From the NCBI GenBank assembly GCA_009103225.1, contig RHPI01002699.1, positions 1 through 56,353 of the forward strand: a stretch of DNA of 56,353 nt, written 5' to 3'. Positions 83 through 18,000 of this stretch are shown here, piece by piece. The stretch is from Chlorokybus atmophyticus. Taxonomy: Eukaryota; Plantae; Mesostigma and Chlorokybus algae. Position 1 is the stretch's first letter, and each line of letters begins with the position of its first letter. A program made the translations under genes and the position numbers. The notes under the pieces were generated by a model, which saw only the letters and a program-made list of their open reading frames with translations, was not told the origin of the DNA and did no database searches.

Positions 83-626
83 GGCTCAACGATTAGGGCA
101 GGTGCAAAATGAGGCTAAGAGGGCCTTATTAGCAACCCAAAATCGTATGCGTCAATATGCCGATGCCAAGAGGGCAGAGGCCGTGTTTGAAGTGGGACAA
201 CTAACCCTAACCCTAACCCTAACCCTAACCCTAACCCTAACCCTAACCCTAACCCTAACCCTAACCCTAACCCTAACCCTAACCCTAACCCTAACCCTAA
301 CCCTAACCCTAACCCTAACCCTAACCCTNCATTGCCCTAACCCGAATCTTAAAATACATAATGTATTTCATGCCTCGCTATTGAGAACCTATCACTCAGA
401 TGGGTCGGTGCAGCCACCACCACCCCCAATGTTTATAGAAAGAGATTGGGAGTGTGAAATTGAGGGTATAATAACCCACAAAGGCCGGAAAGGTAGATCT
501 CCCAGTTTCTTTGTGAAATGGAAGGGCCATCCGTTCGAGGCATGTGAATGGGTTGACGAACCTAACATACGATCACCGCTTCTGATAAAGAAATATTGGA
601 GGGAGCTAACGGTTGCCCAAAGATGA
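83..626 (+). pseudogene. Gypsy integrase C-terminal/chromodomain fragment interrupted by telomeric repeats
   Basis: GPY/F-region motifs (RMRQYAD, FEVGQ, KIHNVFHASLL) and chromodomain (VKWKG...W). The KL-P-GPF segment is missing and telomeric repeats sit in its place. Confidence 0.88.
201..328 (+). repeat. Second (interstitial) CCCTAA tract inside the integrase
   Basis: About 21 perfect units ending at a single N (329), which is probably a contig join. Confidence 0.9.
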
Positions 627-1900: not shown

Positions 1901-3892
1901 GATCTGGTAGAGGGCTTTGGGCCAAGTAGGTCTTAGCCAAGATAGTTCCTAGAGCTCACGGCGATAGAGTTTGCCATCAACAAAGAGCCAATCGCGGGTG
2001 GAGGGTAGCCGCCGCGCGACTTGAGTTCTGGGCTTTTGGGGCTAAGGTAGGGGTACCTAAGCTAGGTGACCATAACCCTAAATTTACCAAGTAGTTGTTC
2101 ATTCAACGAAAGGTGATTAAGGGAGTGTACAGTCACTACATGTAAAAGTGTGTGATCACTGTACATAGTTTTTGGTGTGATTTCCCATCCGCGCGTCGTA
2201 ACACTGAATGACCTTGCTCTACGTGCTCCCCAGCTGAGTCCTTGACTCCTGTAAGGCATGCACACCGCACGCAGAGAGCGCAAGCAAGGCAAATGCGAGT
2301 ACACAGAACGAAAGCGATGACTCGGTGCTGTGGATTGGATTGCAAGTCAACAAGCTCCTGGACAAGGATGCTGGTGAAATGCACACAGCTTGTCACGCGG
2401 TGTATGTGGGTATAAGGTGTTATAGCTAAGTAAGACGTGATTACAAACTGCAAGCACCGAGTGCGCAAAGGCAAGCAAGGACAGTCACAATCGAATAGTG
2501 GGTGAGGTTTGTGCAAGCATTGCGGCAGTGTGAGAGTGATGTAGTGTGCAGGTAGCAGATGCGATGGCCACTAGCATGGGAGCAAGAGTGTACACTTACA
2601 GGCGTACGGGTAAGGCAGGTTCGGCGGTTTGTCAGGGTAATTGGTATGCTTAACAACACACAAATAGCTTCCGCTGAATGAAAATATATTACAAAGATCT
2701 GCTTCACTGAGCCTTGGGTGCTCATCGACCCCAAGTTGGACCACTGGTCAGTCTCGGGCAGTGCTACCGCCGCTTCCGCTCCAGTCCGTCTACTTGCAAT
2801 TCAATGCCGACGCTTCCGGCGGGAGTTGCCTAAGTCTGCTGTCAACGAGGCCCGCCGCCATAGGGACTGCGTTCTTATTGGTGGAGGCCGGTGCTGGCAG
2901 TCGGCTGCCACGCGGCCCATTGACATGACGGGGCCGCACCCTGATTGGCGGTCTGAGGCCTACCGGTTGAATCTGGGTCGGTTGATCTAGATGTTAGTGA
3001 ACCAACCCTGATGCGCGGTAGGCTGCAAGAGGGAGATGCGTGTCGAGGGTTATCACCATGACAAATATCTTTGTACGTACCGTGGCGTGAAAGTTACGCT
3101 GAATTGAGTTTTGTAACACTTAACTGCAGGTTGCTACCATGTTGCAGCACATTTATTAATATTATAACTGTAACACATAAAAACGAACAACATGCAGCCA
3201 TAAGCGGCCACGTATGCAGAACTGTGCTTAATTTTACATTTATTGGCATGCGTTTAAACAATTGGATGAGCTTTGGACGGCCAGGATCATTTTAAGGCAG
3301 ATCTAACGGTGTAAAACGCTTGTACTCGCCGCCTAGCCCATGAGAAGCAGGCGGGCCGCACATACTGCCACGCAGCCCAGCAGTCGCGGGTGCCGTGTGA
3401 TGGCCCTTCAGCAGGTTGAATGCCGGCCGGCCGGCCGGCCCGACCAAACAGCCGCACCACTAGTTTCAGATTCTGCTCTCTTTATTCATTCCGAAGCCTC
3501 GTATATTAATGTATGTGCCAGCAAAGGACCGAAAGCAACATTACATACATGTACTGCAATGGCGATTGACCTGAGACGGTACTGACATTATAGTGTACCG
3601 TGCTGCGCACACGACCATGACTGGTAGGAGGACAGGATATATAGTGGCATGTGTGGACATCGTTGCGTCACAGGCCAACATGAGGAGGGACTGGTAGGCG
3701 GCCTGCATGAAAGTGTGAGGGACATGCACCCTTGCACAGGCATCCTTTCCTTCCAAGCGAGCATCTTGCGCCGCTACTTGAGCGGAAACGGCACCCGAGA
3801 GGTGGTTGCCCGCGTCCAATCCGGCTGCTGTCTCGCAAACGTCAGCTTTAAGAGAGAGAGAGCGCGCGCGCGACAGCAGAGACGCGTTCGCG

Positions 3893-6800
3893 ATGGCGAG
3901 CGGCGCGGCCGCGGCGCTGGTGGCGTCCACGCTGCTGCTGGTGTTGCTGGGGGTGTGCTGCTCGGGCGCCGCAGCGGCAGCGGGCGGCAAGGTGGCTGGC
4001 TTCCCGCACGGTCTGGCAGACCCTCCCCTGGCCCGCGCCACACCCTCCCCGTCTCCTGCTCATCCCCTGCGCCTGCACGCCTCCGGCGCCCGCGGCCAGC
4101 CCCAAGCCGGCCCCAACCCGCCTCAGGCAAGCCGCTCTCACATGGCATTGCCAGAGGCTGTGGCGTAGATATACCCGTGCGCATGTAGCATCGCATGCAT
4201 CTCATGCATGATGCATGCTCCAGAGTTGTGTTCTCCGTCTGGATGACTTGCTCTTGCACGTTTACCCACGTGCATGGGAAGGCAATGCGTCAGGCAACAT
4301 GCTCGCTCCTCATGTTTTGGTGCAGCATGCATTGCCGCAATGCAGAGAGAGAGAGAGAACGACAGGATTGTGTACCATACCTGCCGTTTTATTCCAGCAT
4401 GTGTTCCTCTGTGCTGGGGCAGACCAACGTATGGGGTCACTGTCATGATGCTTCCTCCGTTACAGCAGCTGCAATGCCTTGTCCTCTCTATGTGTTTTCC
4501 CAATACCGTTGTTACTCGTCCAATTGCAACCCGTTGCTGTCGTCCCATCAATTGTCAAAGGTACTCATGAGCGGGTTTTGGGCACCCGCAGGGTCCAACT
4601 GACGCGACCATTGCGAGCATCGCGACGAGTGTTGGCGGCGTCCACCATGTCCTCATCGACGCCATAGCCAAGCCTGGGCAGGCTGCTGCCCTGGTTCAGC
4701 AGCTGCAGCCACTGCGCGTCGTCGCCAGCTCCGTGTCCGTTGCAGGCGACTTCGTCAGCTTCCTACTGCCGCTTGACCAGGTGGCTGAGCTCAACATCCT
4801 CCAGGCGCTCAGCTTTGCCATGCGCTCAGCGGCCACCGCGCAAGCCGGCAGCGTCGCAGATCAGGGCGACACAGCCCAGCGCAGTGCCGCACTCCGAGCC
4901 AGTGTGGCGGGACTGACGGGTGCAGGAGTCAAAGTCGGTGTGCTCTCCGACTCTTACAACGTGAGTCCCAACAACAATTACTGCCTTGCACCGAGCGTTG
5001 CATCATACCTGCTCAATTTGTTCTCGGCTGATACAGGCATCGGGAGGAGCAGCGCAGGATGTCGGTAAGTCGTTGGCTTGCAAACGCTGTGTTCTCGTCA
5101 TCATTATCCACCCGCGAGCAGCCTTGCAGCTGCTGCTCATGCTGCTATGTGCACATGTCGACTAAGCGATCCTGTCTTCTCAGCCACTGGCGACCTTCCG
5201 TCCTCTGGGGTGACAGTGCTGAAGGACAATAGTGGTGGCTTAGACGAAGGCAGAGCAATGCTACAGATAGTGAGCGTCTGTTTCCCTAGGTTGTTGGTGA
5301 TGTTGGGATGCTGTGCTCACACTTCCCTTGCACATACCCCAGGTGCACGACGTAGCTCCAGGTGCGCAACTATACTTTTATTCCTCCTTTTTTGGTATCG
5401 CGGACTTTGCCAACGGCATCATAGCCCTTGCCAACGCTGGTTGCAACATCATCATTGACGACACCTTCAACTTCTTGGAGCCGTACTTCCAGGACGGAAT
5501 TGTTGGTCAGTGCGCGGCCAACATGCATTGCCTTTCGTTGCTTGCAAAGCAACCAGTACAGCCTCCCCTCATGCACGTCTGCTCTCTTGCCAGCTCAAGC
5601 TGTCGACCAAGTGAAGACGCAAAAAGGAGTTTCCTACTTCGCGGCTGCTGGAAACTATGTAAGCCAACCAGCTTGCACCATTGCCTGCGCACAAGCTGGA
5701 CTATTCTGATCATGAGCACGTGCTTACAATGCTCGCATGCAGGCGACTCAAGCTTGGGAGACAAGTACGTATGTTACACTGCTGTGTACATGTGTGATTG
5801 TATGCTCAATCTGGAGACGTTATTGCAAGCATGCATTCTGATATCGTAATCTTGACAAAAAGATCACCGTGCATGGCATGCCTGAGACTCGAAGCACTGA
5901 GTTCTCGGTTGTGCGCGCAGCCACCTGGACAGAAGATGCCAACCACCTCTACCTGTTTGATGCTGCCAATGGCTACAATGTGCAAGAGTTTGTGGTTCCT
6001 GCAGGGACAGCTACAACGATCTTCTTGCAAGTGAGCTTTATCGATCTGTAATTGTGCGCATCAGCGCGATCGCTTATCAGTCTACATGTGCACGTGCAGT
6101 GGGATCAGCCATACACAAACTCCGCAAACAACCTCGACTTGCTGGTGTACACGTATGACCCATCTACCGACAGCTTGGTTTTTTACGACGGGGACACAGC
6201 AGACAATACTGGCGGTGCCCCGATCGCTGTGAGTGTGCCCCTTCAGTTCTCTCTCTCCCTTGCTCTACGCCCTGCTCACGCCACTGTACAACACCTTGCA
6301 GGCGGTTCATCTGGATAACTCAGACGGTTATTACTACTACTTTGATTTCTACGTATATCTTGCAATTTATCACGCATCAGGCCCAGCACCATCAAGAGTG
6401 AAGTGAGCTGCATCCTCGCAGCTCCTGTTACCTCGATTTGTGTGGGTTGGTAACGTTTACTCAATTACACTGATCGCTCGCAGGTACGTGTACACGCCCG
6501 GGCCTCAGCCTGGGGGGCCAACGCAGTTCACGACGTATTCTCCAACTTCCTTCGGCCACTCTCAGGCTGCGGGCTGCTTCTCTACTGCCGCAGCATAGTA
6601 AGCACAGTGATACAGCTTCAGCTGTAGCTGATCATGCTGTAGCACTGACCATGATGACATGCTGACGAGCGCTGTGCCTGCATGCAATAGCTATGGCAAC
6701 ACCCCAGCCTATGGCGTCACACCTGCGAAAGTGGAGACATTTAGGTGCAAGAGCATTGCACAGACAGTGCCTCCCATTCTGTCTGTCCCTACACCTCAAA

Positions 6801-9130
6801 CCATCGCAGAGACAAGCCGCCCTCCCCCCGCCCCNNNNNNNNNNNNNNNNNNNNNNNNNNNNNNNNNNNNNNNNNNNNNNNNNNNNNNNNNNNNNNNNNN
6901 NNNNNNNNNNNNNNNNNNNNNNNNNNNNNNNNNNNNNNNNNNNNNNNNNNNNNNNNNNNNNNNNNNNNNNNNNNNNNNNNNNNNNNNNNNNNNNNNNNNN
7001 NNNNNNNNNNNNNNNNNNNNNNNNNNNNNNNNNNNNNNNNNAATAGTCACAGCTACATATCCCCCCCCCCAATGCATACACAGTCTGCAAATCTTTTTGT
7101 TTGTTGCAGCTCTCTCGGTGGAACTCCTACGCTCTTTACTCCCACAGGCACCAGGTCAATATTTTGCGATAGCCATTGCTGCCTTGCCATGCAGAGCATT
7201 GTAACATTGCCATGCCCTTACAGGCTTGCAACGCCCATTGTGCGCCAGAAGCCTGATAGCACTGCCCCTGGTAAGCATGCACTGGTACCAAGTTCTCATG
7301 TTGTGAGGTGGTGGTCATTCTTTGGTTGATGCTCTTTTGCTTGCAGTTGCTGAGTGTTGAACTTGCTTGTTCTGAACTTGCTTGCGTAGATGGCGCAGAT
7401 ACAACTTTCTTCTTTAACGGTCAAGACCGCAATGGTAACGGGCTGCCGGACTTCAGTGGAACATCTGCCGCTGGTACGCTAACACTATGTAGAGTGATCC
7501 GAACTGCTTGTCGTCTTCAGTGTTGTGGATGACCTGTTTTTCTAATCATGAGGTTGTCGCAGCTCCTCATGCAGGCGGTCTGGCGGCACTTCTGCTCCAA
7601 GCCAACCCAACGCTCACCCCAGACAAGATGTACGCCATCTTGCGCCTCACCGCCGACGACATGGACAACCCACTCACTGACGGATTTGACTACGGCTTCG
7701 ACTACAGCACAGGGTAAGTGCACTCCAGCCTCTCAACATGCGAGAGCCTTGCCTTGAGTGGCACGTTCTCCCTGTTGCAGAGTAGTGGTAGAAATAGTAG
7801 TACCTCATCGCATGTGATGACCTCCACGCCCTTATCACTACTGCTGAATGGCGCGCGCAGGTATGGTCTCCTCAATGCTATGAACGCATGGGTGGCAGCA
7901 GCGTGCCGCACTGCGTGCGGGAAGATCACTGTTACATGGCCGTTCTACCTTGATGCTGGTTGCGGAGCCGGCGGCTATCGACTCAAATGCTCTGGAGGAG
8001 TGCTGAGCTACACCAACCCCTCCGGGACATTCACTGTCCAACCTCCCCTGCGTACGGACTACCTTCTGCTGCGCTCTGTGACCCCTCTGCTTGCTGCCTA
8101 CGGCTGCCCCTCGGCGGGCAGCACGCAGAAATCCTTCTCCCAAGTAAACACGCCTTTCACAATCAGTGGCCTCAACGTTGTCATCGGATATGGCACTAAT
8201 GTCACGGCCAGTTTCACCTCGTATCGCGCCAACGGCACAACCATTCGCTCTGCAAACTGCAAGACAAGCCCCACGGGGGTGCCGAGCTACTGCAACGGCA
8301 CACAATGCTGCACGCTTCCCCTCACCACGCCCGCGCAGCGCATTGCGTTCTTGGAAGTCGGTAGCTGTGGAGGCGCTGACATCCTCTACCCTGCTGCTGT
8401 CGTTACCACACCCGTTGATGCCGCGAATGCCAAGAACAACTACTTCCTCAGATTGGATTTTACTGCATACGCAAGGTCTGTATGCTTTGACGTCTATGCC
8501 GCATTGCAAGGTGCGATACTCAGACTCACGGCATGACTTGCACCGCACTGCTATCAGGCCAAAGTCCACGCAAGCCTGTGATGCCAACTGGTGGTCAGCG
8601 ACAACCCATACGTGCCGATGGCCATACAATTTGCAGCCGACAACAAAGCTGCGCGACGCTTTTGCCAGTACAACTGCCAACAAGGCTATTGTGGACTCCA
8701 GATACGCGAACACAACCACGATGCAGCAGGCGCTGACATCCACTGCCTCTGGCAATGTGAGGAGTTATGCAACACTATCTTTTACTCAAGTAGCAATGCT
8801 CAGCACCTTTGAAGAATGATGAGTCTCAGCAATCCCACTGTCTGGTGCAGGCTACGTACAACAACCTGGCAGCTCAGGCCGCACCGGCGTTGCTGAATGC
8901 TTACCAAATTCGTTACCCTCTGTATGTCAGCGAAGTGCAGACTCAGTTCCTAAATGCGTTGAAGTCTACAGGCGATCGTAAGTACTCTACAATGCGCTGG
9001 TTGTGGGTTTGCCTTGTAATCATTGCAACTTGGGAGATTCATCTTTGGTATGTCCTCTGCAGCTGTGGGGCAAACCACTTCGTTCTCACGCCTAAACCTG
9101 AACAAGTGGTGTCCTCTTACAAACTGCTGA
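3893..9130 (+). CDS. Multi-exon secreted protein: signal peptide + bacterial-type S8 subtilase + GUB_WAK-like domain + PDF1-like C-terminal domain
   Basis: Signal peptide MASGAAAALVASTLLLVLLGVCC. Subtilase motifs GVKVGVLSDS (4946-4951), DEGRAMLQI|VHDVAPGA, YFAAAGN, QKPD..APDG, FSGTSAA|APHAGG (Ser 7464-7466), TG|YGLLNA. Exon 7861-8475 continues into CGKITVTWPFYLDAGCG...YRLKC...PFTISGLN...CNGTQCC. Exons 8558-8789, 8851-8977 and 9063-9130 splice in phase to WCPLTNC-stop. One intron contains an N gap (6835-7041). Confidence 0.85.
6835..7041. other. Assembly gap (N) flanked by poly-C
   Basis: Run of N. Confidence 0.99.
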
Positions 9131-9584
9131 AGTCCAAAAACACTGGTTCGCGGCTTGGACGATGATGGTATAGAACCTGAGTTTTCAATTACATACAAGA
9201 AAGGTAACAGAGCACACATTACGATGTGGAGCAGGCATACCAACCACTCCGCGTGCTTTTTGGCTTTGATAAGCAGCAGCAGTGAGTAGTAGTTATTAAG
9301 TGTTGTCAATGAGTAGCAGACCATGAAGCGTACAAGTCAAAAATTTTGTTTGCTATTTACTGTAGTTTGCGTGTCAGTCGCATCTACAATGCTATGCTAC
9401 CGTACTGTGACGATATTGTTCACATGACACGTTCAGTATCTACATCTGCTCGCACTTCTCCTTGGCTGTTGGCTACATATGTGCTCAAGCCCGTCATCTG
9501 GCTCGAGACGATGAACATATCGGGGTGCTACCCTCTTCACCACCGCCCATTGCACTCCCCGCACTGCCCACGCCCCTTAGCGCC

Positions 9585-15067: not shown

Positions 15068-18000
15068 CTAAAAAATTGGGAGCAGCTGGATAATGCCTTT
15101 TACTTGCTCCAGAGTCATGACATCGAGATGTGAACCCCCTCGACGCTTTTCCCATTGCAGAGCGATGCACTTTGTGTCGCTCGCCACATCCAGCTTCATG
15201 TACCAGCGGACAAACACGACCTCCTTCCACATGCGCTCGCCGCTACCACCCCACACCACCACGCGCAAAAAAAGGAGTGCCTGAGCATACCACGTCACGG
15301 TCTCACCGTCCTCATCACTTTCCAACTCAAGTGTAGAGAACGAAAGCCGCCCATGGAACATCCAAGTTGCGCGCGCCATGCTGACTCCTGATGTCATGTA
15401 CACCGCTGCGCCTCCGCTCACCATGCAAACAGCACGCCACCCGTTGGCAAACTCTAGTTGTTCCCTTCTCAACCAGCTGTCCAGTGTGGCAGCTTGTCGG
15501 CAAATGGAGTCTTCAGGGCGACTTGGCGGCTACGCACAGGACCGCTCCAGTACGGGCTGGACTCCCTCATTGTTAGCACATCCATCCGTAGCAACTTGTC
15601 CGTCTTTTCCATTACATTACATTACAGCACTGCTGTCGCGCTTGCATCATGACCGATCGCATCTCGGGATCCACGACCATGCCATCCTCTCTCACATACT
15701 CCGCTCAACTCCATGCCTTTAAGATGCGTTCCTGGTAGTCCTGGTTGTTGCCACCACGCGCCCACTGTTTGATATTTCGGGCGTGCGTCTGCTCCATGCG
15801 GTTGGCGCTTAACCAATCTGGGTGTCCACTGCTGACAATTGCCGACCCAAAATGAGTAAGCTGATGCATCTTCTCGATCTTCCAACCTGACTTCTGTGCA
15901 GAATATGACGACAGCAGCGGATGCAACACTGCAGCTTTGAAGGCAGCCAGCTCGTTGTCGGCTGTGGTCAGGGTCTCTCTTGTGTGTTCATGCGCCTTGA
16001 GCAACTTCTTGTTCCACTGGGCAAGCGATGCGGCAACAATAGTGAAGAACTCGTTGCCCTCACTGTCGAGCAGCAAACCGTCTGCGAGCTCCTCGAGGAC
16101 CGGCAGCAGCTGCAGCACCGCCACTTTCTCCACCACCTGAAAGGAGTGGTCGGACAGGAAGAAATCTACTGTGCTTGTGGGTGCCTTGAAGTGCGAAACC
16201 CGAAGAGTCGCCTTGCATGCATTCAGCCTGTACACATCTGCTTGTGAGCACGTGTCGTTGGATTTTGTGTTCAACACAAAAGCAACACCAAAGACGTGCT
16301 TGGCCTGCAGAATCTGTCTCGTGGATGGACGTATTCGTTCCTTCGCAGCGTCGTACACAGCAGCAAGCAGGTGGTCAATGATGCCTCCCAGCACTTGCAT
16401 TGCGTCAGGGGCAAGACGAGAGTAGCAGTCAGCTCCCGGCACCTGCGACTGTCGCCAATCCCACAGTGCATTTTGTTGCCAAACCACATTGCCTGGTTTC
16501 ACGGAAAGCCATTCATCCTCACGAATGCCGATAAGTTGACCATTACCTCCTCGACATGCATGGAGTGCTGCTCTTTAAAAGCCTTGGCTGTCTGGCGTGC
16601 ATTCCTAACACCGCTATGCAGGTCCGCCCGCAGCTGACGCATTGCTGGTGTGTAGTAGGCCTCGGTTCTCAATTCCCGGTCCTCATCCATCTCCAGCAGA
16701 TTTGATTTGGTGACGAGACAAACATCGCAAGGATGTTGTGTTTGGTTGCCCGACACAGTGCATGCGAGTGTGGCAGTCTCCTACAACACGACAAACTCAG
16801 ATGTTCTACTGACAACATCCTCCATGCACTGTTTGCTGGCAGACTGCATCCGGTTACAACCATGCATGCCCACTACCTGCAAATCGCTGATGTAGTTGGC
16901 AAGCGCGGGCAACACACGACGCTCGATGCCATTCGGGTCGATGAGTTGCAGACCTTCCCAGCTCGCCCGCTTCATCCCCTAACACTACATTCAAAGCATC
17001 ATGAAAAATCTCATGTTTTCGAATGGAGAACGATTCCTTGCCCTGCGCCCAGGTGGGATGCCCGGCCACTGCGTGAACCACCAGCAGAAGCGCTATCATA
17101 GCAACCCCCATGTTGCTAACATACATGTCTAAACTGTAGTTGGCAAGAGATGCCATCAGAGGGTAGCAAGAGCGTTTGCCCGCGCTGTCCAGCGTCGTCT
17201 TGTCACTGTACAGAATGGCAGGCGCCAAGTGGGACGCTTCCCCCACCTCTCTCCTCAAATCCACCTCAACATCCTTCCACCAATCGCCCGTGGAAGGATG
17301 GCCAAAGGATGTGCTCGTCACCACTGTACTGGAGATTAAAGCCATTGGCGTCATTTGGGTTGTCATACAACCGCGCGAGCCAAATCTGCTCCGACCAAGA
17401 GCATTAACAGCCATGCTGGCATTAGACTCTATTGCATTTCACAGACCTTGACCGGCATATATGTGACACTAATGTCCCGATCCACAGGGTCTTCAGGCTT
17501 GCGCAGGTCAGCCGTCAAATAGTTTTTATATGGCAGCACACTCGCATGTGCATGTGACACATGGCTCTGATGGTTGAAGCACATGCACCGCACACAGTGA
17601 ACACACCTCAAACTGAGAGAAAGCAATTGTGGTCGGGAGGTAGCTGGCCACATGCACCGGTCTCCCACCGGAGCTCTTCCGCCAGGAAGTATGCATTTCG
17701 GATGCACTTGATGATCCGCCCCATGCCGGAGGCCAACAGGCCTTGGCCGTTGTTGCACTGCACGAATGCCACTGCAAGAGCATGCTCCGAGCCATACCAC
17801 CTGAATTCCAACGCGTGCAAAGGGACGCCTCCACTTTCATGTTGGCGTGCCACAGGTTTCTCAGGCATTCGCACACATTGAAAGCCCTCGTTCACTTCTT
17901 CCTCGTCATGTTGCTGCTGTGCGAGTGTCTCCTAGAGGGGTCCTTCAGCATCAAGCATGTGCGCATCTTGGAACTCCCCTGTTCAACATGACCTGCACCG

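What the first reader, a model, noticed from the sequence alone, without database searches (positions are those of the whole stretch)
3893..9130. Three-way chimeric secreted protein: bacterial-type subtilase + WAK pectin-binding domain + PDF1-like domain
Seen: the subtilase end (GYGLLNAMNAW) and the GUB_WAK-like start (CRTACGKITVTWPFYLDAGCG) lie in the same exon (7861-8475), so the fusion does not depend on a splicing guess. Three further in-phase exons give CDANWW...AFA...TMQQALT...NLAAQAAPALLNAY...YPLYVSEVQTQFLNALKS...QTTSFSRLN, which matches the protodermal factor 1 C-terminal consensus as I recall it. Known: GUB_WAK normally sits on WAK receptor kinases; plant subtilases use I9-S8-PA-Fn3. 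I do not recognise this architecture. Inference: a pectin- or wall-anchored protease without TM or kinase, possibly an early context for WAK ectodomains.
Basis: partly seen in the sequence, partly recalled or inferred. Interest (0 to 1): 0.86.

Follow-up and report, generated by a model that had tools for sequence, protein, structure and literature searches.

The report
Algal protease fused to wall-protein domains
A transcribed gene of the early-diverging streptophyte alga Chlorokybus encodes one secreted protein that joins a bacterial-type subtilisin-like protease to two domains otherwise known from land-plant cell-wall proteins (the WAK receptor ectodomain and the protodermal factor 1 C-terminal domain), so both wall domains existed, without any kinase, long before land plants.

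Summary
Window 3893-9130 (+) is one 20-exon gene for a 936-aa protein. It has a signal peptide, a bacterial-type S8 peptidase, a ~190-aa WAK-ectodomain-like module and a ~130-aa PDF1_C domain. There is no TM segment, EGF repeat or kinase.

- **Fusion:** The S8 end and the WAK start share exon 7861-8475. RNA contigs confirm 14 GT-AG introns, including those that tie this exon to the S8 serine exon and to the three tail exons.
- **Assembly gap:** The gap at 6835-7041 lies in an intron. The reading across it matches paralogues and bacterial homologues with no residue missing.
- **Identity:** The gene is Chlorokybus atmophyticus Chlat1 3551 (Chrsp234S03552). The public model skips an 18-aa exon.
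- **Paralogues:** Three Chlorokybus paralogues share the architecture.
- **WAK module:** Pfam GUB_WAK_bind scores 31.6 bits (cut-off 29.4). hhalign against WAK ectodomains gives E 2e-26.
- **Tail:** hhalign against PDF1_C proteins gives E 3e-17. Its pLDDT-91 model hits Arabidopsis PDF1 as the only significant Swiss-Prot match.
- **S8 core:** Nearest relatives are bacterial, at 38-45% identity.

Most likely this is an extracellular protease tethered to the wall or matrix. Pectin binding is unproven, and the catalytic base is unclear. I found no paper describing the architecture. I file it as a new variant of known kinds, of moderate to high interest.

The parts
3893..9130 (+). Whole coding region: 20 exons, 936 aa. 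Same gene as public model Chlorokybus atmophyticus jgi/Chlat1/3551, Chrsp234S03552 (P0022).
   Evidence: Gene model. RNA joints. Identical to P0022 apart from two model differences.
3893..4126 (+). Exon 1, holding the start codon and signal peptide (aa 1 to about 29). The donor is either a GC at 4127 or the GT at 4160 used by the public model (+11 aa). This is unresolved.
   Evidence: Only hydrophobic 19-aa windows are at aa 1-27. No RNA contig covers this part. Both donors keep the frame.
4592..7893 (+). N-terminal pro-region and S8 peptidase domain (aa 79-611, exons 2-17). It includes an inserted beta-sandwich at about aa 323-440.
   Evidence: Pfam PF00082 at 58-60 bits. 38-45% identity over about 540 aa to bacterial S8 peptidases. 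Introns 2-10 and 15-16 have RNA joints.
4949..4951 (+). Asp198, the presumed catalytic Asp in the motif VLSDSYN.
   Evidence: D in 113 of 121 family members.
5243..5254 (+). Invariant D-E-G-R (aa 231-234), at the place where canonical subtilases have the His motif.
   Evidence: Conserved in 120-121 of 121 sequences. The Pfam S8 match starts at G233. The mapping onto the His motif is from memory of subtilisin and is therefore an inference.
7464..7466 (+). Ser548, the catalytic serine in GTSAAAPH.
   Evidence: Invariant in 121 of 121 sequences. Aligned to the serine motif of solved S8 structures.
6691..6744 (+). Exon 12 (18 aa), which the public gene model omits.
   Evidence: Present in all paralogues and bacterial homologues. 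Flanked by AG/GT. No RNA evidence.
6835..7041 (.). Assembly gap, lying inside intron 12 (6745-7109).
   Evidence: Exons on both sides read continuously against homologues.
7861..8475 (+). Exon 17. It holds the last 11 aa of the S8 domain and the whole WAK-like module.
   Evidence: Open frame. RNA contigs bridge both of its borders.
7895..8475 (+). WAK-ectodomain-like module (aa 612-805, 10 Cys, 3 N-glycosylation sequons). The Pfam GUB_WAK_bind match lies at about 7904-8041.
   Evidence: 31.2-31.6 bits. phmmer hits to WAK-like proteins. hhalign E 2.4e-26 over 181 columns. Atlas neighbours are all GUB_WAK clusters.
8558..9127 (+). PDF1_C domain (aa 806-936), a helical domain with 4 conserved Cys. 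It is encoded by exons 18-20 (8558-8756, 8851-8977, 9063-9127), with the stop at 9128-9130.
   Evidence: hhalign E 3e-17. HMM of the non-Chlorokybus relatives: 55 bits. AF2 pLDDT 91.5. Foldseek hit to PDF1 Q9S728 and to plant and bacterial clusters.
9131..9320 (+). 3' UTR, at least this far.
   Evidence: RNA contig record 5 runs to 9320.

Best explanation
**What it is.** This is one genuine, expressed Chlorokybus gene. Its product enters the secretory pathway.

**Domain order.**
- An N-terminal pro-region.
- A subtilisin-fold (S8) peptidase core of bacterial ancestry.
- A cysteine-rich module homologous to the N-terminal ~190 aa of land-plant WAK/WAKL receptor ectodomains.
- A helical, four-cysteine PDF1_C domain.

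**How it most likely works.**
- It is probably an extracellular protease.
- Bacterial relatives carry interchangeable adhesion or anchoring modules after the S8 core (RTX, Ig-like, PKD/cadherin-like, T9SS tails).
- In Chlorokybus that position holds two streptophyte wall-protein domains. These probably hold the enzyme in the cell wall or mucilage, or aim it at a wall-bound substrate.

**How it most likely arose.** The protease core was probably acquired once from bacteria. It then gained introns and the WAK-PDF1_C cassette, and duplicated within the Chlorokybus lineage.

**Shown:** gene structure, transcription, domain homologies, bacterial affinity of the core, and conservation of the architecture in paralogues.

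**Inferred:** secretion, catalytic activity, wall tethering, the ligand and the order of events.
For: **Single gene**
- Same-exon continuity between S8 and WAK.
- RNA contigs bridge 7713/7861, 8475/8558, 8756/8851 and 8977/9063, plus ten further introns.
- A clean 936-aa frame.

**Architecture is conserved, so it is not an accident of one locus**
- P0003 (969 aa), P0004 (915 aa) and fragment P0001, on other scaffolds, have S8 + WAK + tail.
- The gene itself is P0022.

**Bacterial core**
- The best non-Chlorokybus hits are Spirosoma, Hymenobacter, Fibrella and cyanobacterial S8 peptidases at 38-45% identity and 87-100% coverage, each with varied C-terminal modules.
- The Chlorokybus copies form one clade (support 1.0). 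Its sister is a protein with Big_9/PKD/cadherin-like domains.
- None of the 120 relatives carries a WAK or PDF1_C domain.

**WAK module:**

**PDF1_C:**

**Secreted and soluble**
- A single N-terminal hydrophobic segment, 14 Cys in the two C-terminal modules and 6 N-glycosylation sequons.
- No EGF, TM or kinase.

**Catalytic residues:** Ser548 and Asn314 are invariant, and Asp198 is present.
Against: - **Catalytic base unclear.** The canonical His motif is replaced by an invariant DEGR across the whole bacterial clade. His241 is conserved in only 88 of 121 members. So activity cannot be read from the sequence.
- **Some paralogues differ at these residues.** P0003 and P0023 have Tyr at position 241, and P0004 has Asn at position 198. 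Some members may therefore be non-catalytic.
- **No binding data.**
  - Chlorokybus wall 'pectin' contains no endo-polygalacturonase-sensitive alpha-1,4-galacturonan (PMC10953000).
  - WAKs are dispensable for oligogalacturonide signalling in Arabidopsis (PMC11684076).
  - The ligand, if there is one, is therefore unknown.
- **Weak model of the WAK part.** AF2 confidence is poor there (pLDDT below 50 over much of it).
- **Incomplete RNA cover.** No contig covers exon 1 or 6565-7328, so a single full-length transcript is not demonstrated.
Confidence: 0.62

Rival explanations
1. Pseudo-protease, or a wall-binding or sensing protein. On this reading the S8 fold is a non-catalytic scaffold and the biologically relevant parts are the WAK-like and PDF1_C modules, acting as a structural or adhesive wall or mucilage protein.
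For: - The canonical His motif is absent. His241 is Tyr in paralogues P0003 and P0023, and Asp198 is Asn in P0004.
- The C-terminal modules are as well conserved among paralogues as the core, with a mean column identity of 63%.
Against: - Ser548 in GTSAAAPH, Asn314 and the DEGR block are invariant across 121 bacterial and algal members. That argues for a conserved chemistry in the clade.
- The window's copy keeps Asp198 and His241.
Confidence: 0.17
2. Precursor that is cut after secretion. On this reading the protease domain, or another protease, releases the WAK-PDF1_C cassette or PDF1_C alone as free wall proteins. The fusion would then be a delivery or maturation device rather than a tether.
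For: - Established knowledge, not tested here: subtilases commonly remove their own pro-regions and C-terminal extensions.
- PDF1_C exists as a small stand-alone secreted protein elsewhere (P0142, P0144, P0145).
- The S8-WAK junction (..NAWVAAAC..) and the WAK-PDF1_C junction (..TAYARPKSTQAC..) are short linkers.
Against: There is no evidence of processing. The linkers are short and conserved rather than long and disordered.
Confidence: 0.17
3. Artefact: an assembly mis-join at the gap, a gene-model fusion of neighbouring genes, or bacterial contamination.
For: - There is an assembly gap inside the locus (6835-7041).
- The core looks bacterial.
- No RNA contig covers 6565-7328.
Against: - The gap lies inside the S8 domain, not at the fusion point, and both sides fit homologues without loss.
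- The fusion point is inside one exon and is bridged by an RNA contig.
- There are 19 spliceosomal introns, 14 with RNA joints.
- Three paralogues on other scaffolds have the same architecture.
Confidence: 0.02

Closest known systems
Bacterial modular S8 family serine peptidases (Cytophagales such as Spirosoma, Hymenobacter and Fibrella; filamentous cyanobacteria), e.g. P0024, P0034, P0053, P0066, P0078, P0079
   Same: - The ~540-aa core is 38-45% identical, including the pro-region and the inserted beta-sandwich.
- The SDS(Y/F)N, DEGRAM and GTSAAAPH motifs are shared.
- The layout is the same: a core followed by variable C-terminal binding or anchoring modules.
   Different: - The window's gene is eukaryotic, with 19 introns.
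- It has a eukaryotic-style signal peptide.
- Its C-terminal modules (WAK-like, PDF1_C) are found in none of the 120 nearest relatives.
Land-plant WAK/WAKL (RLK-Pelle_WAK_LRK10L) receptor kinases, e.g. Marchantia MpRLK-Pelle_WAK_LRK10L-8 (BFI42041.1, P0008)
   Same: The N-terminal ~190 aa of the ectodomain is homologous. This covers GUB_WAK_bind plus the following region with the YC..CC and (A/S)I(I/L)YP motifs (hhalign E 2.4e-26, 29% identity).
   Different: - There are no EGF repeats, no transmembrane helix and no kinase.
- The module sits C-terminal to an enzyme instead of at the N-terminus of a receptor.
Arabidopsis PROTODERMAL FACTOR 1 (Q9S728) and Pfam PF27764 PDF1_C
   Same: The C-terminal ~120-aa helical domain is shared, with a conserved Cys near each end and the AALLNAY core. 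Support comes from hhalign at E 3e-17, Foldseek at probability 1.00 and TM 0.64, and TM 0.64-0.79 to plant and bacterial clusters.
   Different: - From memory, PDF1 is a small proline-rich wall protein of the L1 layer, whereas here the domain ends a 936-aa enzyme.
- The Chlorokybus domains have an extra Cys pair (C-x11-C ... C-x4-C).
- The function of PDF1_C is itself unknown, and no solved structure resembles it.
Plant subtilases SBT1-5 (I9 - S8 - PA - Fn3-like)
   Same: Secreted S8-fold proteins of streptophytes, with a proposed bacterial origin (PMC6713707).
   Different: - This is a different S8 lineage. No I9 or PA Pfam hits were found.
- No plant SBT appears among the 120 nearest relatives.
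[quoted passage not shown]

Membership tests
Peptidase S8 (subtilase fold, Pfam PF00082) | Profile match above the curated cut-off | tested here: met
   58.3-59.7 bits against a cut-off of 21.8, covering profile positions 73-288.
Peptidase S8 (subtilase fold, Pfam PF00082) | Catalytic Ser in the G-T-S-x-A-x-P motif, and the oxyanion Asn | tested here: met
   GTSAAAPH with Ser548 and AAGN with Asn314, both invariant in 121 homologues. Ser548 is aligned to the serine motif of solved S8 structures.
Peptidase S8 (subtilase fold, Pfam PF00082) | Catalytic Asp near the N-terminus of the domain | tested here: met
   Asp198 in VLSDSYN, D in 113 of 121 sequences. Its assignment as the catalytic Asp is by position only.
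Peptidase S8 (subtilase fold, Pfam PF00082) | Catalytic His in an H-G-T-type motif | tested here: inconclusive
   No HGT motif. An invariant DEGR lies where the motif is expected, and His241 is conserved in only 88 of 121 sequences. The Pfam match begins only at G233.
Plant subtilases (SBT: I9-S8-PA-Fn3) | I9 inhibitor prodomain and PA domain insertion; clustering with plant SBTs | tested here: not met
   No I9 or PA Pfam hits at E up to 1. The nearest relatives are bacterial.
WAK/WAKL receptor kinases | GUB_WAK_bind-type N-terminal ectodomain | tested here: met
   31.2-31.6 bits on the exon against a cut-off of 29.4, but 27.1 bits on the whole protein. hhalign against WAK ectodomains gives probability 99.7% and E 2.4e-26.
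WAK/WAKL receptor kinases | EGF-like repeats, a transmembrane helix and a cytoplasmic Ser/Thr kinase | tested here: not met
   No EGF or Pkinase hits. No hydrophobic segment beyond the signal peptide. The protein ends 131 aa after the WAK module.
WAK/WAKL receptor kinases | Binding of pectin or oligogalacturonides | not testable with these tools
   This needs binding assays. Chlorokybus lacks land-plant-type homogalacturonan (PMC10953000).
PDF1_C (Pfam PF27764, protodermal factor 1 C-terminal domain) | Sequence-profile match to the family | tested here: met
   - The local Pfam copy lacks PF27764.
- Indirect tests are positive. A precomputed PF27764 hit lies on paralogue P0001.
- Three of the five best profile hits carry PF27764.
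- hhalign gives E 3e-17 over 117 columns.
- An HMM of the non-Chlorokybus members scores 55 bits on the window's protein.
PDF1_C (Pfam PF27764, protodermal factor 1 C-terminal domain) | Same fold as the C-terminal domain of Arabidopsis PDF1 | tested here: met
   The AF2 model has pLDDT 91.5 and pTM 0.88. Q9S728 residues 183-298 is the only match with E below 1 among 550,129 Swiss-Prot models, at probability 1.00 and TM 0.64. Both structures are predictions.

The most novel reading that the evidence does not exclude
The WAK-type ectodomain and the PDF1_C domain are usually treated as land-plant wall or epidermis inventions. On this reading they were already present, and already linked as one cassette, in the deepest-branching streptophyte lineage. 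There they served as the wall-targeting tail of a horizontally acquired bacterial protease. The WAK ectodomain would then have begun as a targeting module of secreted enzymes and been captured by RLK kinases only later. Its apparent absence from the intervening algal classes would reflect loss or poor detection.
Probability: 0.3. Interest if true: 0.78.

Novelty: new variant of a known kind. Interest (0 to 1): 0.62.

Why it matters
**Origin of the WAK ectodomain.** A 2024 review, citing Dievart 2020 and Gong & Han 2021, states that WAK-type domain families are absent from Chara, Zygnematophyceae and Coleochaetophyceae and are therefore land-plant specific (PMC10868138). Here a clear homologue of the WAK ectodomain sits in Chlorokybus with no kinase, in at least four paralogues. 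That pushes the origin of the domain back to the base of Streptophyta, or else implies lateral movement. It also gives a kinase-free context in which to ask what the domain binds.

**What the domain binds.**
- Chlorokybus has no land-plant homogalacturonan (PMC10953000).
- The pectin-receptor role of WAKs is under dispute (PMC11684076).
- A WAK module from this alga is therefore a natural test of whether the ancestral ligand was pectin at all.

**PDF1_C.** The locus places PDF1_C, a domain of unknown function and with no solved structure, in a defined enzymatic context. The fold searches also show it as a C-terminal module of bacterial secreted proteins.

**Domain shuffling.** This is a clean case of a horizontally acquired bacterial enzyme gaining introns and host-type modules.

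Tried and rejected
- **Whole-protein searches with my own model.** A spliced protein has no reference, so I searched with exon 17 instead. That search found the public model P0022, which then served as the reference.
- **Word-indexed search with the tail of P0001** (region 307-437). It found only P0001 itself. A profile of the four tails was needed.
- **Local Pfam scan of the tail exons.** It gave nothing, because the local copy predates PF27764.
- **Foldseek of the WAK+tail model against PDB.** It returned only weak, meaningless matches such as viral capsids and tailspikes. The WAK part of that model is low-confidence, so I discarded them.
- **Foldseek of the tail model against PDB.** No match better than E 1.9.
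- **Search for WAK or PDF1_C domains in the 120 bacterial S8 relatives.** None found. The idea that the donor gene already carried PDF1_C therefore has no support.
- **Search for paralogues in the window.** None found.
- **Antisense ORF 7838-8755 (305 aa).** No Pfam hit. I treat it as the shadow of the coding exon.
- **Literature searches.** I looked for GUB_WAK in algae, WAK in Chlorokybus, and PDF1_C. No paper describes this architecture.
- **Bacterial promoter/terminator scan of the 3' end.** Irrelevant for a eukaryotic gene, and empty.

Full report
**Observation.**
- The stretch 3893-9130 on the + strand is a multi-exon eukaryotic gene.
- From the reading frames and the splice joints seen in RNA contigs, I built a 20-exon model with a clean 936-aa frame.
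- Run X1 holds contigs at 99% identity or more. They show GT..AG joints at 4960/5037, 5064/5184, 5269/5343, 5505/5594, 5658/5743, 5764/5921, 6030/6100, 6228/6302, 6402/6484, 7473/7563, 7713/7861, 8475/8558, 8756/8851 and 8977/9063.
- The key exon, 7861-8475, is open throughout. It carries the last residues of the subtilase domain and then the cysteine-rich module.
- One contig has 42 nt of the serine-motif exon joined to 7861-8167. Another has 61 nt of the exon's end joined to all three tail exons and to 190 nt of 3' UTR.
- The fusion therefore depends on no splicing guess, and it is transcribed.
- No contig covers exon 1 or 6565-7328, so a single end-to-end transcript is not shown.

**The assembly gap.**
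- The Ns at 6835-7041 lie between exon 12 (6691-6744) and exon 13 (7110-7154).
- The reading across them aligns without any missing or extra residue to three Chlorokybus paralogues and eight bacterial homologues.
- The gap is therefore intronic, and the two sides are in frame as far as homology can show. No read bridges it.

**Identity of the gene.**
- An exhaustive HMMER search with the WAK-like part of exon 17 found eleven proteins.
- The three best real matches are Chlorokybus atmophyticus proteins from EukProt/JGI Chlat1. A low-complexity tick protein also scored well and was ignored.
- A search with the S8 part of P0003 then returned P0022 (jgi/Chlat1/3551, Chrsp234S03552, 929 aa).
- P0022 is identical to my model except for two differences. 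Its exon 1 uses the GT donor at 4160 (+11 aa), and it skips exon 12 (-18 aa).
- Homology supports exon 12. The exon 1 donor remains open.
- The window is thus Chlorokybus, a member of the earliest-diverging streptophyte lineage.

**The three parts.**

(a) S8 core.
- Pfam Peptidase_S8 scores 58-60 bits.
- The 120 best relatives outside Chlorokybus are modular S8 peptidases at 38-45% identity over about 540 aa. Those with names are from Spirosoma, Hymenobacter, Fibrella, Rufibacter and cyanobacteria.
- These relatives carry RTX, Ig-like (He_PIG), PPC, DUF4215 or T9SS-sorting C-terminal modules.
- In a FastTree of 121 sequences the four Chlorokybus cores form one clade (support 1.0). Its sister is a protein with Big_9/PKD/cadherin-like domains. 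The tree is unrooted.

(b) WAK-like module (aa 612-805).
- GUB_WAK_bind scores 31.2-31.6 bits on the exon against a cut-off of 29.4. On the whole protein it scores 27.1 bits.
- phmmer finds WAK-like proteins of Marchantia (MpRLK-Pelle_WAK_LRK10L-8) and Diphasiastrum, plus unlabelled eukaryotic contigs, over 150-190 residues.
- One of those contigs (P0006) is followed by kinase exons.
- A profile-profile comparison gives probability 99.7% and E 2.4e-26 over 181 columns.
- The homology therefore covers the whole N-terminal WAK ectodomain, not only the 64-residue Pfam domain.

(c) Tail (aa 806-936).
- Paralogue P0001 carries a precomputed PF27764 (PDF1_C) hit.
- A profile of the four tails finds five proteins among 5.8 billion, and three of them are PF27764 proteins.
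- hhalign against those five gives probability 98.9% and E 3e-17.
- An HMM built only from the non-Chlorokybus proteins scores 55 bits on the window's protein.
- The AF2 model of the tail is confident, at pLDDT 91.5 and pTM 0.88.
- Its only match with E below 1 among 550,129 Swiss-Prot models is Arabidopsis Protodermal factor 1, residues 183-298 (probability 1.00, TM 0.64).
- The same fold ends many plant and bacterial secreted proteins in AlphaFold DB clusters.
- No solved structure resembles it.

**What is absent.**
- There are no EGF, kinase, I9 or PA hits.
- The only hydrophobic 19-residue windows are at the N-terminus.
- The protein is thus predicted to be secreted and soluble. This is an inference, because no signal-peptide predictor was available.

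**Conservation of the architecture.**
- P0003, P0004 and fragment P0001 share S8 + WAK + PDF1_C, with 63% mean column identity in the C-terminal 330 aa. All cysteines but one are conserved.
- P0023 (567 aa) ends right after the S8 domain.
- None of the 120 bacterial relatives has a WAK or PDF1_C domain.
- The simplest history has four steps:
  - one bacterial S8 gene entered the Chlorokybus lineage;
  - it gained introns;
  - it gained the two streptophyte-type modules;
  - it then duplicated.
- The order of these events is inferred.

**Mechanism.**
- By analogy with the bacterial family, the position after the core holds interchangeable adhesion or anchoring modules.
- I therefore read the WAK-PDF1_C cassette as a targeting or tethering tail that keeps a secreted protease in the wall or mucilage.

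**Two cautions.**
- The first is catalysis.
  - Ser548, Asn314 and a DEGR block (aa 231-234) are invariant, and Asp198 is nearly so. The expected His motif is missing.
  - His241 is conserved in only 88 of 121 members. It is Tyr in P0003 and P0023, and P0004 has Asn at position 198.
  - From my memory of subtilisin, DEGR lies where H-G-T would be. The base may therefore be Glu232, as in sedolisins. This is an inference and was not tested.
- The second is the ligand.
  - 'Galacturonan-binding' is a family name only.
  - Chlorokybus 'pectin' has no endo-polygalacturonase-sensitive alpha-1,4-galacturonan (PMC10953000).
  - WAKs are not required for oligogalacturonide signalling in Arabidopsis (PMC11684076).

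**Rivals.**
- A non-catalytic wall protein.
- A precursor that releases the cassette after secretion.
- An assembly or annotation artefact, which is nearly excluded.

**Comparison and novelty.**
- The gene is in the public annotation, and the database's precomputed domain tables list PF00082 and PF13947 for it.
- Six literature searches found no paper that describes a subtilase-WAK-PDF1 protein or a GUB_WAK domain in streptophyte algae.
- A 2024 review states that WAK-type domain families are land-plant specific (PMC10868138).
- The plant subtilase study that included Chlorokybus dealt with SBT1-7, a different lineage (PMC6713707).
- I file this as a new variant of known kinds: a modular bacterial-type S8 peptidase whose tail slot holds a kinase-free WAK ectodomain and a PDF1_C domain.

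**Limits.**
- I could not run a profile search for the WAK module across all algal genomes.
- 'Chlorokybus plus land plants only' is therefore not established.

Noticed in passing
window 6691-6744: The public gene model (Chlat1 3551 = P0022) skips this 18-aa exon just before the assembly gap. All paralogues and bacterial homologues have the corresponding residues, so the public protein is probably 18 aa short inside the S8 domain.
   Followed up: yes
window 5243-5254 (aa 231-234), and aa 241: Across 121 members of this S8 clade an invariant D-E-G-R lies where the canonical His motif is expected. The His at position 241 varies (H 88, Y 19, T 7, A 5). The clade may use a non-canonical catalytic base.
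   Followed up: partly
P0003 residues about 296-320; P0004; P0023: Paralogue P0003 has a 25-aa insertion inside the S8 core that no other member has. This may be a retained intron in its public model. P0003 and P0023 have Tyr for His241, and P0004 has Asn for Asp198.
   Followed up: partly
P0142, P0144, P0145 (L002 for P0144); AlphaFold DB clusters: PDF1_C is not plant-specific.
- Small secreted proteins from metagenomes carry it, one of them with a Tat-like RRR signal.
- Bacterial proteins with T9SS sorting, Ig-like or lipoprotein annotations carry the same domain at their C-terminus.
   Followed up: partly
window 8354-8608 (RNA run X2): A second RNA run of the same study holds a contig with the same 8475/8558 splice joint but 8 differences over 173 nt. 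This is probably the orthologue in a sibling strain or species.
   Followed up: no
window 102-626 (+) and 16854-17414 (-): A chromodomain ORF (Pfam Chromo, E 4e-9) and a Plavaka-transposase-like ORF (E 6e-12) flank the gene at a distance. The locus sits among mobile-element remnants.
   Followed up: no
window 3850-3870 and 4340-4352: Short (GA)n/(GC)n runs lie just upstream of the start codon and inside intron 1.
   Followed up: no
window 4127 versus 4160: Two in-frame donors are possible for intron 1: a GC donor in a good CAG|GCAAGC context, and the GT donor used by the public model. No RNA contig covers this part.
   Followed up: partly
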